NCBI RefSeq assembly: GCF_964204865.1
Contig: NC_135259.1
Span: 11,098,001 to 11,162,000 of the forward strand
Length of the DNA: 64,000 nucleotides
Direction: 5' to 3'
Source: Styela clava
Taxonomy: Eukaryota
Shown here: positions 37,992 through 64,000 of the stretch, one piece after another
How the letters are laid out: each line of letters opens with the position of its first letter
Numbering within the stretch: position 1 is the first letter of the stretch
Translations under genes and position numbers: made by a program
Notes under the pieces: model-generated
Told to the model about the DNA's origin: nothing
What the model saw: the letters and a program-made list of their open reading frames with translations, nothing else
Databases searched by the model: none

Positions 37992-38927
37992 TTATTCCTT
38001 AAAGATGAATGGAAATATTATTTGCTTCCAGTCAGGAAATGATAGTATGCCCATTATAAAATTAACATATAAACTAGATCCCATGACCTGCGTGAGTGTC
38101 CAGGAATCGTTCAGAACTGATTTAGCCATCACTACAGATGCTATTGTATCCGTTACAAAACAGAAAGTTGCTGTAATAAGAGATCGGTACAACACCGGTA
38201 ACAAGTTATCGGCAGCTTCTCCAACATTGGATCGATGTTTGTACAAAGGATATATAAAAAGAAACAACAAAGTAGCTTGCGTTATGATGGAAGACGTACC
38301 AACAGCAATCCAAGTACCCGAACTGGGCAACAACGATTCCACTATTGCACATCCGAGATTTGTCATTCCAATTCGATAACTGATGATGAAAGCCGTTGAG
38401 TTCAGAATTTCTGTAACTATTATAAAAACCAGAGCCAGCGAGCTAACAAATCTCAACAGAGCTGTTGTGAGATGTTGCATTGCTGGATTCGTATATAAGA
38501 GTCTTTGTCGCAACCATAGGACGGTGTAACTTAATCCCAAAAAAGTCACACTCATTACTGATTTAAAATACTTTGTTGCTGCACAGTATTTGACGATAAA
38601 TTTCTCCACAATAAATTTTTCGAAGGTATTTGCAAGCCAAAAAATTAAAAACGCAATGCACATCAGGAAGCGAACGATTTTCATCCATTTTCCAATTTTC
38701 TTTCCAGTGCTTTGATTTTGTTCAGCATTTCCAACTTTGCGTGTTTTAACGAAATCAATAGTGAGCAGAATCACAACATAAATAACCGAGAGCAAATAAA
38801 ACGAAGTAATTATTATATTTCCGTACCACTTCCAATCATGCATCCAATGGGAAGTTTCCCCAATGGAATCTGTTATATTCGATGAATTATTTGCTGATGA
38901 AGATACGTTGATATGCAATTCGGTCAT
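37992..38927 (-). CDS. Intronless orphan seven-transmembrane (GPCR-like) protein, 311 aa
   Basis: Longest ORF in the window. N-terminus has N-glycosylation sequons (NVS, NNS, NSS, NIT) and no signal peptide. Seven hydrophobic segments. Cys at the top of TM3 (KYCAA) and in ECL2 (LGCAI). Motifs LWLRQRLLY, LFIYPL, FPDWKQIIFPF. Acceptor-like ttgttccag at ~39036 in the 5' leader. Confidence 0.88.
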   Translation of the reverse strand: MTELHINVSSSANNSSNITDSIGETSHWMHDWKWYGNIIITSFYLLSVIYVVILLTIDFVKTRKVGNAEQNQSTGKKIGKWMKIVRFLMCIAFLIFWLANTFEKFIVEKFIVKYCAATKYFKSVMSVTFLGLSYTVLWLRQRLLYTNPAMQHLTTALLRFVSSLALVFIIVTEILNSTAFIISYRIGMTNLGCAIVESLLPSSGTWIAVGTSSIITQATLLFLFIYPLYKHRSNVGEAADNLLPVLYRSLITATFCFVTDTIASVVMAKSVLNDSWTLTQVMGSSLYVNFIMGILSFPDWKQIIFPFIFKE

Positions 38928-56702: not shown

Positions 56703-59700
56703 AATATAAACCTCATGTAATTTTGAATTTCAAGCTCCCGGACACAATATCTTTTTATTGTCACACAATATCCTCCTTAGAAAGCCCCTGTAGGGAATTT
56801 AAAGATTACAGGCTTTGTAAGCATTGCATAAAAATTCGCAGGTTTTGGGTGGTAACATTCTACAGTTTAAAGACAAATTGTTATTCATCACCTTAAGAAG
56901 GTTGCCAACATGCCAACGCTTTCGATTAGGACTGGCACAAAAAAATGACATACCATCTATTTTTTGTAATTTAACTTTGTATTTGACAAACGACATTTCA
57001 TTTCATTTTCATAGTTTTAAATTAAAAGTTGGACATATATTAACAGCTAAACTCTGGCAGTTTAAAAAAGCATTTAATTGGGAAACAACATTCTTACAAT
57101 AGCACATATCTGACATTTGCTTCGTTATGCAGTGTCTATCTGCGGTATTTTAACATTTTATATAGCATGTTTTTGAATTTAATCTCGTATAACATTGAAA
57201 TCATACGACATAGATTTGATTGCCATGTAAAAATACAATGCTCTGATGCCTCAAAATTATTTCTCTAGATTACTTGATGTGTGAAGTAAACCGCAGAGCA
57301 TCAATTATTAGCAATTATGCCAATTTTCACAAGCCTATGTTTAACTTGCGGTGAAATGATGTAGAAAAAATTTAATTTTATCCAATAATAATAACTTTTA
57401 TTTGGGGTTACTAAGATCGTAAAATAGATACTTTATTAATTGACAATGGAAAACAATTATCCTTTTCGTACCTTTGAAATTTTCGTTACCTTTTTTGTAT
57501 GGAATCGCTATTTTTAAATAAGTCCTTTACATTTTGTCATTCTTATCTTCTTTCAAAAATTTTAAATGAAGCTTTTGAGTCATAAACATTCTATTTGAAA
57601 CGTGATTGAAAATGGAAATAATTCAAACCACAACGCATTTTAATTGTCCGTAATAGCTTCCTACTAACCTTTTCACAAACATCTAATCTCTTCATAATCT
57701 ATAGTTTGTTACAGATTATTAAAAATTGACACCAGGCGAACGTGAAAATATTTTATACAGTGCACGATTTTAGGTTATAGCAAATACTCATTAGAACAAA
57801 CCTATCCTACGCCATCAAGAAGATATTTGTTTCAAAAAAATTAGTTAAATTCAAAATCTTGATCAGGTTTGCTTCGGGTAAAGGTGTATATTCGCAGCCG
57901 ATGGGAATTTTGTATTTGCGTGGCGACTACTAGAAAAAGGTTTGAATCAGAAGTTGACAATATCTAGGTATCTGTGAAATAAATGCATCATTGAATCGTT
58001 CTTTTTGTTACCGTAACTCTCCCGTGTTCTTGTATTGTCGTTGTTCTCCAATACGCCATGTTAAATATGATGGGGATTTTACTGATTTTTTTATTAGTGT
58101 TTTCTACAATGCACAATGTTAAGTATATGTGAATAAAAACTGCCATTTTATATCTAATAATAGAAACATCCAGGTGCTCTAATTACCGGTGCCCGTTGAC
58201 ATTTTATATATAATATTCCATGAAATCGTAGGTTTGAATTCCACGAAAATGTTGAACACGAAATCTCTTTGTCTGTGTAAATTTAGCTTCAATATTGTGG
58301 TCAATTTCTTTTCGAGGCTTTCTAATAATATATACATGGGTTTTGGAAACCCCGAAGTATCTTTTATATATCGGAAATGAATAGCATTTATTTCTGAAAG
58401 ATCTATTTAGTGTCTTCGCGAGACATACAATACACCACAATTAAAGGATCAAAACACTGGGGAAATGATAAGAAAATAATATGTGGGAGATTTTAATTTT
58501 ATTTCTATAAATTGATAAAATAAATTGATTTTATTTATATAAAACTATAATTTTGATCACACAGGTGGCAATTTAATGATTTTGTAAATGAATTTTCATC
58601 TTTTTTTGTTCAAAAACTTCGTTTTACAAATGTCTCTGAGTAGGCAAATTACGGAGTTTGTTAAAACTTGTTTCCTACAACAGAATATATGACAAAAATT
58701 GCACAGAGTGTCTTAACGTGCACCTACATAGTATATTTATGATCATGCTTTCCAAATGCCCTGTAGGCCGTGTGCACAAATGCATTGAGTGTTTTAAGTT
58801 ATATAATTACGAGTAGATTCGTCATAGCCCTGATTCAAAACATAATAAAAATGCAAGACGATGACAGCGTACTTTCGCAATACGCACGCGAATCTTATGA
58901 AAAAACAGATGAATTAAAGTATAGCTAACTTAACTAATAGTAAAACTAATGGGCGAATAGTTTAAGTTAGTCGAGATTATTGAATTCATGCTGATTTACA
59001 AACATAACGTTTACTTTACGTGCTAAAGATACTAAGATTGTATATGCTCATTGACAGTGTTAAACTTTTGACCGCATCGAAATTCGTGGGCACGGACGTC
59101 TAATTGTTTAATTAAATTTATCTTATAAACGACATTGAAAATAACACCTGAGTATTTCCAGACTCCAAAGTTGATATTTACATTCAAACTTATCTGAATA
59201 CATTGTAATTTGGACTTCTGAATTAAAAAATTTATTTCTAGTGTTCTCGATTTTAAAGTTATTTTCAATACAATTGTTTGAAACGATCACGAGTAATCAT
59301 GCAATGGAAATATCATATTTTTTTTGAAGAATAAAAGTAAAATAAATACTGAAACACTCGTAAGGTCATTAAAAATTGTCAATGACTTCGATGAACGTTC
59401 AATGGTTCAAACTTTCACACGCCATTTTTAGAAAACTTTATGAGAGATAATTAAGAGCACGCGAATTCCTGATTTTAAATTCGACACAACACTATTGTAA
59501 TTACTCAATGTTTTTTATGGCGTGAAAGTGATTCACACAAAATATCGTAATTTAGTTATAACAACCAAAAATTAGATTTAATTTGAATATCGACGGTGGA
59601 TCAGAAATACAATTTCGGGAACACTTAATTACAGACCATTTAATAAATAATTTTCAAATGATCAGCCAAGTGTTTGTCATAGAAGAGAAGAGCAGCTTAG

Positions 59701-59841
59701 GGACTATCTATCTATGATACATACATAAAAGAAACCTTTCCTAATGAAACAATAATGCCCCGATTGTTAAAATTCTTACGTCGAATAGCTGATCCTATTA
59801 GTCAATTTTCTGAACACATGGAAAGTGGATGTTCGTTTGCA

Positions 59842-62212
59842 ATGCATTGTCCAAGGCAACTTCTTCGAAGAAAGTTAACGTTAATCACGATTGCAGTTTG
59901 GTGTTTTCTGATATTGAGTATTGAAGGTGAGAAAATTTGTTATTCTCTGGGACACTGTATATGCACTGACATTAAAGTGTGGAGATATCGCGGATTGTTA
60001 TTAACTTACTTACGATGTGTTACGTGATGTAGGTGTAGCGCGGTACAAATGTTTCATATTTACTTCTACCTTCGAGGAAATTACATGAGTGCCTAGTTTA
60101 CAATTTAGTTCAGGACATATGCAACAAGTGTGAAACTGATATTTTGCTATATCGAAATTTACGGTTGAATTAAGACATTTTGATTCGATTTTTTTTGCAA
60201 ATGCCCCAGGTTTTCAGTTGTGCAACACTATTCCATGCTGTATGCTTGTCACCTATCGAACTATTTTCTCAATCGGTATTGGCTTCAGTATATTAGCAAA
60301 ATAGGTCGTTTATCTGCATAAAACACATATTATATCACAACATTTCGAACGTCAAATTAAGCTAATATAAATAGATACTAACAGTTTTTTTTAAACGAAG
60401 TTTTAAGTATGTGAATGATACATTGAACTTGTTAGGTGATAAAATCAAACCGTTTTCTGAATTTTATAGATTTTTCATTGTATTGCTGTTACGACATCTG
60501 AACATTTTATTCAAACTTTTATTTTTGTTTGGTTGTGCTGTCCCTCGAAAACGCTTTAGGGGGTTACTGAAGTAACAAGATTGAATATGTACGATATACT
60601 CATTGCTTAATAAAATTCATATATATATAGCCTATATTATTACTATTGGACTTTAGGTGACCGGAGTATTAAATTTGGGGTTCTTATATGAAAGTTTCTC
60701 CAAGTACGGGGACATTAAACTCTTTTAAATTATGTGCATTGTTAAATAATTCCTATTTATTTCGTAGGGTGTCACAGTAAAGGTAAAGAAAAGCATCCAA
60801 TAGTTGCACGAATGCTAATTCGAGTTTCTTTTGTCACTGTCGACGTGGACGAGACCGACGATAAAACGTTACATATAGACGCGTGTGCAGATAGAGCAGT
60901 AAGTATTTTTACAAATTTTATTGCATTTTTGAACCACATGTTCATTTAACAAAAATAAATTAATCACATCAACAAGACGTTTTGGTGCTCCCGAAGATGG
61001 CGGACACCGGGACGTACTATGTGTACCGGGTTAGGGTTAGGCCATAATTTCAGGTACAAATACAACGGGAGTCACTTGGCTAGTCCCCGAACTCGTAATA
61101 GAACTAAAATAGAAAAAATTGGAACAAAATTATGGCCTAACTCTAACCTGGTACATATACTACGTTTCGGTGTCTGCCATCTTGGTTCGCATACTTTGGG
61201 AGTAACGACTTTTTTTGCATATTCCCAGTTGCTTATTGCAGTAATTCGAGAGTCTTAGCGTACACCAACACAAATAAAATATTAGATACGTTCCGAAAGG
61301 CTGCAGGAAACGTTACAAAAATACATTTTTGCATTTCTCACTTCAGTTTCGCATGACCCTTATATCATTTAGAATAGTTAGTTTCACTCGTGCACCCTCG
61401 CATTATAAGTATTGAGATCTATTAGAGTGACACCATTAAAGAACATGTATTTGGTTACGCAGAAACCCAATCGATAGTACATGGCGAATTTTATTTTAAT
61501 TCTACAAATAGTGGTATCGGTATATAGCGGAAACTCCTTAGTAACAAATCTACTTTGTCAAATATTTTTTTTTGCGCAGTCATACGCGAATTATTTTATT
61601 TTGATGTCAATATTTAAATCTGCGCATGACACTTAATAAGGTATTCCTATGATAAATCGATCTCCGAGACAGTGTTTTCCTAAAATTATGCCATTTTATG
61701 GATTTCCTTCAGTGAATGAATACCTAAATGTTATACCACATTCTTTCTTTATTTGTAAATATTATTTAATTCATTGACAGGTATATGGATATAGATCATC
61801 CTTAAAGACATATTTCCTTTCTAATACGTCACTTATGAAAGTATTAGAGGATGGTGAAGACGAAAACTTTTTGACAATGTTGAGAAAACTTCATAGATTA
61901 TGGATATGTGACAAATTTTATACGATATGTAAAAAGTTCACGGTGAGTAGTAAGAGTTTGAATTCATATATATTCTCAAAAAAAAGGCTCTGCATGTACA
62001 AGAATGAACTTTCTGTCGATGCGAAATGTGTAATTAATAAACGAAACGAAAAGCAGTAATTAGGAACAATCAGATGTGTTTCATTTTTCGGATAGCTTCA
62101 AATCGTGGTTTGCTTAAAAAATTTCTCTTCGAAAATCTTATTGTTTCTATTTCAGTGGTGCATTTATTGCAAACATATTCCGGAACTCAGAGCGGTGGGA
62201 TTGTGCAGATAA
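59842..62212 (+). CDS. Uncharacterised small secreted Cys-containing protein, 4 exons, 144 aa (173 aa if ATG 59755 is used); helical-cytokine-like by inference
   Basis: Exons 59842-59926 (MHCPRQLLRRKLTLITIAVWCFLILSIE G|gtgaga), 60768-60898 (tag|..CHSKGKEKHPIVARMLIRVSFVTVDVDETDDKTLHIDACADRA|gtaagt), 61781-61942 (cag|VYGYRSSLKTYFLSNTSLMKVLEDGEDENFLTMLRKLHRLWICDKFYTICKKFT|gtgagt), 62156-62212 (cag|WCIYCKHIPELRAVGLCR*). Strong canonical splice sites, phases 1,0,0. Exon 2 is open only in the required frame. N-terminus is signal-peptide-like. Confidence 0.75.
60984..61206. mobile_element. MITE with nested inverted repeats and probable 8-bp TSD, in intron 2 of the secreted-protein gene
   Basis: Termini ggtgctcccgaag / ctttgggagtaac; inner arms aagatggcggacacc / ggtgtctgccatctt and ggttagggttaggccataat / attatggcctaactctaacc; flanks gacgtttt / gacttttt. 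Confidence 0.8.
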
Positions 62213-63359
62213 CAAGACTTGGAAGTGATAATAATCACTGACATATTTTGACAAAAACGTCGAGATCGCTTACGATATTCCAAATCTGGAACCCAAAGTC
62301 AACGAGAGTTAAAGCGTAAATCATCAACCTAACACAACACTTCAAAATTATTTCCTCTTGACAGAAAGCTTGATTGAAAATGTGAATTGTTTTTTCATTA
62401 TCAACCGAATGATGTAAGGAATTTGAACCAGTACTTTTTGAATGTTGAACCTATTTGACATAAACCGATGTGAAGTAGAAATTCCAAGCGTACTTGAGCA
62501 AGAAAACTCAAACGTACTCGATCAATTACTTGGGTTTCTCTTGAAATATCTATGTAATCATTTCAGTTGGTTACATAAATACGAATTTAATACGTGACTT
62601 ACGATAGCCAATTATGACTACTGAGTTTATTATGCGGATCAACGTGTTTTGTAATTCATTTGAGACAATGATAAAGCATTTATTTTTTCACATTTCTGCG
62701 AGATTCATAAGTATAGCCGCTGGTCGGCAACACGTCTTTTATTTATGACGCATTTTTATCAATTTATCTTTATGATTATATTTAATCGATTTTGTTAATA
62801 TAAAAACACATTGTAATTGTTTATCTTTTCATTAAATCGAAACGTTCCGTTCCAGCAACTTCTCAAATTGACGCAAATGTCAAAGACATCACTGCGGTTT
62901 TAAGCTGGAAGTCGGAAAATTATTGATATGAATTGAACTTTTATAAGTTCATCATTATTACGCCATTTAATTATGGCAGCAAAAATTTCGTCCGGAGATT
63001 CGGGGAACATACGTAGTAGGTAGCAACTCCAGACAACTAGCTATAATCTGCTGACATTTTTGGTAATTAGATATACTTATTTTACAGCAGGGTAATTTTG
63101 GAATTTTACTTGCCACCCGTTAGTTGAGGTTATTTTTAACGATCGTATATTCTAAAAGAAGACAAAAAGGACTATATCTGAGGAGATGACATATTAAATT
63201 AACTGCTATATTTTTCAAAAAAATCACGCATATCCTCAAATGTTGCTATATATTAGAGCGAGTTAGTTGGAGGTACCAGGTATTAGCTATTGCACGGTAG
63301 GAAAACCTATTTTATCATAGATTTACCGACACAGTTTGAGGACTACCTACGGCCATTGA

Positions 63360-63710
63360 AACGAGATAGCAATGCTCAAATATATGAACACGAAAGCCAA
63401 AACAAAATGGTATCAAATCTATTACAGTACCGGTAGTCTGATCACCCGATCACCGAGATGTGATCACGGAACCACGGCACCCAATTTTTAATGACGTCAT
63501 CACACAAAACTTTGAAGTGAAAACGAATCTCATAGAGCCCACATCCATTTTTAAATAAACTGAAAACCTTATTTAATTGCCTTCTAGAGTCAACAAACTT
63601 CAACCACTGGAAATTTTATTGGTCCAGTAGTTGAAGATAATAGCACAAAAATAAAAAAAATTTCACAACGTAATAACAAAACGTGCTATAGGCCCACTTC
63701 GTTTCCAATA
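63360..63710. mobile_element. Probable second Helentron/DINE-like non-autonomous family
   Basis: Terminal mini-hairpin agcaatgct, degenerate subterminal inverted pair tgaacacga / tcgtttcca, internal gatcac repeats, no TSD seen. Single copy in the window. Confidence 0.35.
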
Positions 63711-64000
63711 AAAGAACATAAGGAATAGTGTTCGTTCACTGCAGTTCTTCGCGATACAAGCATATGGTATAGTTTACTATGACGGCAGCTTGCTTGATTT
63801 CCAAAAAACATCGTTAATATAAGCACTAAATGCCTACACGAACCATGGCCATATGACATTCAATCATTAACAATTGTTTTTAGTCGTTTACAACATTCAG
63901 AATAATGCCTAACATTTTGTAGTTATTTTACCATAAAAAGGCAATAATATAGTGGCGGCTCTGTACTTCAGTCAAGAATATCGAATTCCGACACTTTGTT

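What the first reader, a model, noticed from the sequence alone, without database searches (positions are those of the whole stretch)
59842..62212. Orphan secreted 4-exon gene with the architecture of a four-helix-bundle cytokine
Seen: a spliced gene that the ORF track shows only in fragments. It has a signal-peptide exon ending in a phase-1 intron, then two phase-0 introns, giving a ~110-115 aa mature chain. The chain has four amphipathic segments (HPIVARMLIRVSFVTV; CADRAVYGYRSSLKTYFL; EDENFLTMLRKLHRLW; DKFYTICKKFTWCIYCKHI), a long acidic loop after the first, one sequon (NTS), and 6 Cys if cleavage follows CHS. Five ATTTA pentamers lie at 62585-62784 (weak evidence in AT-rich DNA). Known: class I helical cytokines keep phase-0 introns (with a phase-1 first intron in IL-6, GH and PRL), diverge too fast for BLAST, and tunicates have JAK/STAT and gp130-like receptors with poorly known ligands. 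Inference: this may be an invertebrate-chordate helical cytokine. TLHIDAC..RA loosely recalls IL-15 TLYT...C..TAM, and NFLTMLRKLHRLW recalls IL-4 helix C (LIRFLKRLDRNLW); both resemblances are by eye only.
Basis: partly seen in the sequence, partly recalled or inferred. Interest (0 to 1): 0.8.

Follow-up and report, generated by a model that had tools for sequence, protein, structure and literature searches.

The report
Orphan secreted sea-squirt protein gene
This is a real, spliced, already-annotated sea-squirt (Styela clava) gene for a small secreted cysteine-containing protein with one hidden sister gene and no other detectable relatives; nothing I could test shows that it is a cytokine.

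Summary
The gene model is right. Junctions 60898/61781 and 61942/62156 appear as GT..AG skips in contigs of likely-RNA runs from two studies and are absent from a DNA run. All three junctions match RefSeq XP_039261933, "uncharacterized protein LOC120338068 [Styela clava]", 173 aa.

I found an unannotated paralogue on contig C1. It has the same four exons, the same phases (1/0/0), Gly-Cys-His-[ST]-Lys after the signal peptide, and five conserved Cys.

Nothing else matches: Pfam, PDB sequences, a 5.8-billion-cluster word search, and a 1.84-billion-protein HMMER search with the exon-3 profile.

AlphaFold2 failed twice (pLDDT 34.7), so the fold is undetermined.

The ATTTA cluster is real and is the densest in the window. 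Only its first pentamer lies in RNA-covered sequence.

Verdict: an ordinary taxon-restricted secreted protein. The cytokine reading is unsupported (about 5%).

The parts
59755..59926 (+). Exon 1 coding part as in RefSeq (first ATG 59755). Encodes a basic n-region, the hydrophobic core LTLITIAVWCFLILSI, and the first base of Gly58. Ends in a phase-1 donor AAG|GTGAGA.
   Evidence: The sequence of P0001 = XP_039261933. Contigs X2 59686-59885 and X4 59717-59905.
60768..60898 (+). Exon 2. Completes Gly58, then CHSKGKEKH..., the hydrophobic beta-branched stretch IVARMLIRVSFVTV, the acidic DVDETDD, and TLHIDAC(97)ADRA. Phase-0 donor GCA|GTAAGT.
   Evidence: X1 contig 60766-60898 is joined to 61781. 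Aligns with exon 2 of the C1 paralogue.
61781..61942 (+). Exon 3 (residues 102-155). Contains the NTS sequon, the acidic turn EDGEDEN, the strongly amphipathic helix NFLTMLRKLHRLW, and C144-x6-C151.
   Evidence: Joints 60898/61781 (X1, X4) and 61942/62156 (X1). Paralogue match.
62156..62212 (+). Exon 4 coding part: WC(157)IYC(160)KHIPELRAVGLC(172)R, with stop codon at 62210-62212.
62213..62850 (+). Probable 3' UTR. RNA-type contigs cover 62161-62627. Five ATTTA lie at 62585-62784. The first poly(A)-signal-like hexamer, ATTAAA, is at 62831.
59927..60767 (+). Intron 1 (841 nt). The single-copy stretch 60015-60347 is covered by contigs of two likely-RNA runs (X1, X2). This is unexplained.
60899..61780 (+). 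Intron 2 (882 nt). Contains a very high-copy MITE-like inverted repeat: arms 60994-61050 and 61127-61183, 88% complementary.
61943..62155 (+). Intron 3 (213 nt), GT..AG.

Best explanation
LOC120338068 of Styela clava is an expressed four-exon gene. With an unannotated sister gene on contig C1, it forms a small, fast-diverging, apparently Styela-restricted family of secreted proteins.

Shown:
- The splicing.
- The public 173-aa product.
- The paralogue with identical exon phases.
- The absence of detectable relatives.

Inferred:
- The N-terminal hydrophobic segment acts as a cleavable ER signal peptide, cut after Gly58 at the exon-1/2 boundary (IEG|CH here, VTG|CH in the paralogue).
- This releases a ~115-aa, ~13.5-kDa, mildly basic chain that begins Cys-His.
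- The chain is held by disulfides among a conserved framework (C59, C97, C144-x6-C151-x5-C157).
- The Cys count is odd in both genes (7 and 5), so one Cys may be free or may link two chains.
- The C-terminal half is helical. The N-terminal half may contain strands.
- The protein most likely acts outside the cell as a soluble ligand or defence-type effector.
- If the ATTTA-rich stretch belongs to the mRNA, the message may be short-lived or inducible.

The target and the fold are unknown.
For: - Splicing: GT..AG joints 60898/61781 (X1, X4; two studies) and 61942/62156 (X1), absent from DNA run X9.
- Identity with XP_039261933.2 'uncharacterized protein LOC120338068 [Styela clava]'.
- Paralogue at C1:10336211-10338642. 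It has a signal-peptide exon ending in a phase-1 G. Exon 2 starts CHTKTK..SKGKEPH and ends ..KTIKLDFCMEDA|GTAAGT. Exon 3 ends ..W-E-C-x6-C-SRFK|GT. Exon 4 is KCIYQNNKGKRNK*. Pairwise E-values are 5e-9 for exon 3 and 0.012 for exon 2.
- The paralogue's hydrophobic core is only ~12 residues, which is typical of a cleaved signal peptide.
- No relatives elsewhere.
- Allelic differences F7Y, T45P and D124E between the two RefSeq versions, and V84E, T87I, D124E plus three synonymous changes in run X1. The reading frame stays intact in every allele seen.
- ATTTA cluster.
Against: - No signal-peptide predictor was available. Cleavage is inferred from the -3/-1 rule and from conservation in the paralogue.
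- If translation starts at 59755 (first long-ORF ATG, A at -3), the hydrophobic segment sits 40 residues in and could act as an anchor.
- The paralogue has no RNA evidence and no database record.
- Junction 1 was not seen directly in the contigs.
- The runs are only guessed to be RNA.
- Fold, disulfide pairing, secretion and function are all untested.
Confidence: 0.6

Rival explanations
1. It is a divergent class I (short-chain) four-helix-bundle cytokine of a tunicate, a ligand for a gp130-like or CLF-3-like receptor that signals through JAK/STAT.
For: - It is small, secreted and predicted mainly helical in low-confidence models.
- It has four exons with two phase-0 introns.
- It has an ATTTA-dense putative 3' UTR.
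- It evolves fast and has no detectable homologues.
- Ciona has a GP130-like and a CLF-3-like receptor without known ligands (PMC1963337).
- A STAT DNA-binding domain is encoded in this genome.
Against: - No Pfam cytokine family at E<=10 and no PDB sequence hit.
- AlphaFold2 gave pLDDT 34.7 twice.
- Segment A has strand-type periodicity and composition.
- The conserved Cys framework matches no tested cytokine.
- A structure-based screen of the S. clava RefSeq proteome for the interferon (class II) fold found no secreted hit (bioRxiv 10.64898/2026.05.30.728932). That screen does not cover class I.
- The gene-structure features are not specific.
Confidence: 0.05
2. It is a type II membrane protein. 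Translation starts at 59755, as in RefSeq, and the 16-residue hydrophobic segment (residues 41-56) is an uncleaved signal anchor. A 40-residue basic cytoplasmic tail stays inside and the ~115-aa Cys-containing domain is displayed on the cell surface.
For: - Contigs of likely-RNA runs include 59686-59905, so ATG 59755 is in the transcript. It has A at -3 and no in-frame stop before 59842.
- RefSeq models 173 aa.
- Positive charges (RRK) precede the hydrophobic segment.
Against: - A 16-residue core is short for an anchor.
- A good -3/-1 site (I-E-G|C) follows it.
- The paralogue has only a ~12-residue core and the same G|CH junction.
- Run X2 also covers introns and flanks, so its upstream contig may be pre-mRNA or DNA.
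Confidence: 0.15
3. It is a cationic host-defence (antimicrobial-type) effector family rather than a signalling ligand.
For: - The paralogue is strongly Lys-rich: K+R 13 against D+E 7 in exon 2, and 16 against 4 in exon 3.
- The window gene has pI 8.7 and a strongly amphipathic basic helix.
- Earlier notes place glycine-rich AMP-like genes about 13 kb beyond the window's end (unchecked by me).
Against: - The window gene has an acidic stretch and only a mild net charge.
- No similarity to any known AMP family.
- No expression or induction data.
Confidence: 0.12
4. It is a young, weakly expressed taxon-restricted gene with little or no function, or one on its way to loss.
For: - Low contig depths (2-8) in all runs.
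- No homologues outside the genome.
- About half of the observed allelic changes are non-synonymous.
Against: - An old paralogue (about 30% identity) keeps an intact frame, intact splice sites and five conserved Cys.
- The frame is intact in three alleles.
Confidence: 0.08

Closest known systems
RefSeq LOC120338068 / XP_039261933 (Styela clava, uncharacterized protein)
   Same: Identical product and all three splice junctions. It is the same gene.
   Different: RefSeq gives no family or function.
Short-chain class I helical cytokines (IL-2/IL-4/IL-15/IL-21 type)
   Same: Small secreted chain of about 115 aa, a four-exon gene, some amphipathic helix, and ATTTA-rich downstream sequence.
   Different: - No profile or sequence match.
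- No C-D crossover loop.
- The first segment is strand-like.
- The first intron is phase 1.
- The conserved Cys pattern is different.
- The fold could not be predicted.
Unannotated paralogue on contig C1 (C1:10336211-10338642) of the same genome
   Same: - Four exons with phases 1/0/0.
- A signal peptide ending ..G|CH[ST]K.
- A Cys four residues before the end of exon 2.
- W-x-C-x6-C-x5-C(IY) across exons 3 and 4.
   Different: - About 30% identity.
- Much more lysine-rich.
- 13 residues longer in exon 2.
- A short C-terminus ending in GKR-NK, without the last two Cys.
- No RNA or database evidence.
Other orphan four-exon secreted Cys peptides of S. clava noted by this scan (s1-815916)
   Same: The same kind of object: a small, spliced, secreted, helical Cys-containing orphan with one old sister gene, already listed as an unnamed protein.
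   Different: It lies at a different locus. I found no sequence link, and I did not check that note.

Membership tests
Class I short-chain helical cytokines | Four-helix up-up-down-down bundle | tested here: inconclusive
   AlphaFold2 gave mean pLDDT 34.7 and pTM 0.22-0.25, both with the single sequence and with the allele plus paralogue fragments. No fold search was run, because low-confidence models give meaningless matches.
Class I short-chain helical cytokines | Long A-B and C-D crossover loops | tested here: not met
A candidate A-B loop of about 14-20 residues exists.
Class I short-chain helical cytokines | Profile or sequence similarity to IL-2/4/15/21, IL-6, GH or similar families | tested here: not met
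   The Pfam scan at E<=10 lists only DUF6756 (E 0.12) for the full protein. Single exons give Toddler (E 0.085) and DUF7505 (E 0.029), all far below their cut-offs. PDB phmmer at E<=10 gives 0 hits.
Class I short-chain helical cytokines | Four amphipathic helices of 15 or more residues | tested here: inconclusive
   Hydrophobic moments: residues 127-141 are strong (0.6-0.9) and 143-153 moderate. Residues 66-80 have a larger strand-type than helix-type moment. Residues 100-115 are weak. These methods are crude.
Class I short-chain helical cytokines | Binds a class I cytokine receptor and activates JAK/STAT | not testable with these tools
   STAT_bind is encoded in the genome. The IL6Ra-bind profile found nothing in the exon-wise search, and its controls were silent, so that result is uninformative.
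Secreted proteins (classical ER route) | N-terminal signal peptide with a -3/-1 cleavage site | tested here: inconclusive
   A 16-residue hydrophobic core is followed by I-E-G|C. The paralogue has a 12-residue core followed by V-T-G|C. No SignalP-type tool was available, and the upstream ATGs lengthen the n-region.
Saposin-like proteins | Six-Cys pattern and SapB profile | tested here: not met
   No SapB hit in Pfam. The conserved Cys number five, and their spacing is x37, x46, x6, x5.
RefSeq gene LOC120338068 | Identical protein sequence encoded by the window's exons | tested here: met
   P0001 contains the translations of all four exons in order and is named.

The most novel reading that the evidence does not exclude
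The two genes are the first recognised tunicate class I helical cytokines, or another new family of secreted ligands for an orphan receptor such as the GP130-like or CLF-3-like receptor. They would have diverged beyond sequence detection, with a non-canonical helix arrangement that current predictors cannot model.
Probability: 0.05. Interest if true: 0.85.

Novelty: already known. Interest (0 to 1): 0.25.

Why it matters
If it were a helical cytokine, it would supply a missing ligand for the few class I receptors of tunicates and help date the origin of vertebrate cytokine networks. As it stands, it is one more taxon-restricted secreted protein of Styela clava, already present in RefSeq as an unnamed protein. 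The modest new points are:
- An unannotated paralogue, which defines a conserved five-Cys framework and a conserved G|CH cleavage junction.
- The ambiguity of the start codon.
- An unusually ATTTA-dense downstream stretch.

Tried and rejected
- Pfam on single exons and on the full public protein: only sub-threshold noise.
- PDB sequence search at E<=10: nothing.
- Word search with the exon-3 open frame, and with the full public protein: only the protein itself.
- HMMER search of 1.84 billion representatives with the two-sequence exon-3 profile: the protein itself, plus P0002 (E 1.2e-5). P0002 is a 233-aa tandem-repeat protein (NLPTLLQKFPD...SRQWTCQLYYKSFQT). It resembles the dispersed repeat ORF that gave about 15 identical weak hits in the genome. 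I reject it as a relative.
- AlphaFold2 twice, both unusable, so I ran no Foldseek or VIA search.
- MAFFT misplaced the short paralogue fragments in alignments A3 and A4. Only A6 was acceptable.
- The IL6Ra-bind family search of the genome was uninformative.
- Mitochondrial bipartite presequence: residues 1-12 of the 173-aa form are a basic amphipathic helix (muH 0.9) followed by a hydrophobic segment. I rejected this as unlikely because the paralogue has no such N-terminus.
Exons were searched one by one. The only full-length sequence used was the public database record P0001/P0003, referred to by id.

Full report
**Observation**

Exon 1 runs from an ATG at 59842 to 59926. Exon 2 is 60768-60898, exon 3 is 61781-61942, and exon 4 is 62156-62212, ending in TAA.

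The donors are AAG|GTGAGA, GCA|GTAAGT and ACG|GTGAGT. The acceptors are pyrimidine-rich ..TAG|..CAG| and ..CAG|. The intron phases are 1, 0 and 0.

I laid contigs of three likely-RNA runs from three studies and one DNA run on 58500-64000.
- The skip 60898/61781 (GT..AG) is present in X1 and X4.
- The skip 61942/62156 is present in X1.
- Neither skip is in the DNA run X9.
- X4 covers only exon-like pieces: 59717-59905, exon 3, and 62161-62446.

Junction 59926/60768 was not among the joints listed. An X1 contig has 65 unplaced nt 5' of exon 2. It does continue with 'AG' before exon 2, as exon 1 would.

The runs' RNA nature is the tool's guess. The splice-shaped skips that are absent from DNA support it.

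**Public record**

An HMMER search of 1.84 billion representative proteins with an exon-3 profile returned one true hit, P0001 (173 aa, E 1.6e-28).

It is XP_039261933.2/.1, "uncharacterized protein LOC120338068 [Styela clava]". This also fixes the species.

A third in-frame ATG lies at 59819. Contigs reach back to 59686 and 59717, so the true start is open.

The older RefSeq version differs by F7Y, T45P and D124E. Two of these (F7Y, D124E) correspond to variants seen in the runs (59774 and 61852).

**A hidden sister gene**

A six-frame search of the species' own genome with exon 3 gave one weak hit on contig C1 (E 0.13). Reading that locus showed the same gene plan:
- A signal-peptide exon, MFGSNNLQLLVAFLLFTTSYVT, ending in a phase-1 G (CAG|GTAGGT).
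- An exon starting CHTKTKDSKGKEPH and ending KTIKLDFCMEDA|GTAAGT.
- A 53-codon exon ending RTWECRKYRSSCSRFK|GT.
- A last exon, KCIYQNNKGKRNK*.

The pairwise E-values are 5e-9 for exon 3 and 0.012 for exon 2.

The conserved features are G|CH[ST]K at the exon 1/2 boundary, SKGKE.H, KT[LI]..D.C, and W-x-C-x6-C-x5-C-I-Y. That makes five conserved Cys.

The sister gene is very Lys-rich. It has no database record; the profile search would have found one. It has no RNA evidence, because the reads tool's single call was already spent.

Profile searches of the genome found no third member.

**What it encodes**

The hydrophobic core LTLITIAVWCFLILSI (16 residues) is preceded by RRK and followed by I-E-G|C. 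The sister gene has a 12-residue core followed by V-T-G|C.

I infer a cleaved signal peptide and a mature chain that starts at Cys59. That chain is 115 aa, about 13.5 kDa, pI 8.7, with 7 Cys.

Both genes have an odd Cys count, so a free Cys or an inter-chain Cys is possible. This is inference only.

**Cytokine hypothesis**

No sequence evidence supports it.
- Pfam at E<=10 gives only noise.
- PDB sequences give nothing.
- Word searches give only the protein itself.

AlphaFold2 gave mean pLDDT 34.7 twice: once with the single sequence, and once with an alignment of the second allele and the sister gene's exon-2 and exon-3 fragments. The fold therefore cannot be stated, and I ran no fold search.

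Simple periodicity analysis gave the following:
- NFLTMLRKLHRLW is a strongly amphipathic helix, and DKFYTICKKF is moderately so.
- IVARMLIRVSFVTVDVD has a larger strand-type than helix-type moment and is rich in beta-branched residues.
- TLHIDAC in the window gene and TIKLDFC in the sister gene share an alternating pattern.

The break is at most W142-C144 in the second model. A canonical up-up-down-down bundle needs a long C-D crossover, so this arrangement argues against one. These are weak arguments, not a refutation.

From the literature:
- Ciona has only a GP130-like and a CLF-3-like class I receptor (PMC1963337).
- A structure-based screen of the S. clava RefSeq proteome for the interferon fold found no secreted hit (bioRxiv 10.64898/2026.05.30.728932). 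That screen does not address class I cytokines.
- STAT is encoded in this genome.

**3' region**

Five ATTTA lie within 62585-62784. This is the only 200-nt stretch of the window with 5 or more; the mean is 0.8, and 8e-5 of windows reach 5.

RNA-type contigs end at 62627. The first ATTAAA is at 62831. Inclusion of four of the five pentamers in the mRNA is therefore likely but not shown.

The sister gene has four ATTTA spread over 900 nt, with no cluster.

**Verdict**

This is a real gene, already annotated as an unnamed protein. It belongs to a two-gene, apparently lineage-restricted family of small secreted Cys-containing proteins.

I put about 0.6 on the secreted soluble protein reading, 0.15 on a type II anchored form, and about 0.05 on a helical cytokine.

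Exons were searched separately, and the full-length sequence was used only as the public record P0001/P0003, by id.

Noticed in passing
window 60994-61183 (intron 2); also L002 about 870-975: A MITE-like element with 57-nt inverted arms (88% complementary). Its contig depth is several thousand times the single-copy level in the DNA run. A related element lies in the corresponding intron of the C1 paralogue.
   Followed up: partly
window 60015-60347 (intron 1): A single-copy intronic stretch is covered by contigs of two likely-RNA runs from different studies, at depths similar to the exons. It could be a retained intron, an alternative 5' exon or a separate transcript.
   Followed up: no
window 63284-63651: A second repeated element downstream of the gene. 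DNA depth is up to about 1,190 against about 14, and there are many internal-deletion joints in the DNA run.
   Followed up: no
window 37992-38927 (-): An intronless 311-aa ORF with several hydrophobic segments, possibly a multi-pass membrane or receptor-like protein. It has no Pfam hit at E<=1.
   Followed up: partly
G000:C1:10336211-10338642 (L007 2212-4643): An unannotated, apparently intact four-exon paralogue of LOC120338068. It encodes a very lysine-rich secreted protein ending in ..NKGKRNK, where GKR is a possible amidation/dibasic processing site.
   Followed up: partly
many loci, e.g. G000:C13:205740-205817, C4:3411803-3411880: A dispersed repeat ORF (motif ..SRQWTCQLYYKSFQT..) gives identical weak hits to the exon-3 profile. 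It corresponds to the tandem-repeat protein P0002 and is not related to the gene.
   Followed up: partly
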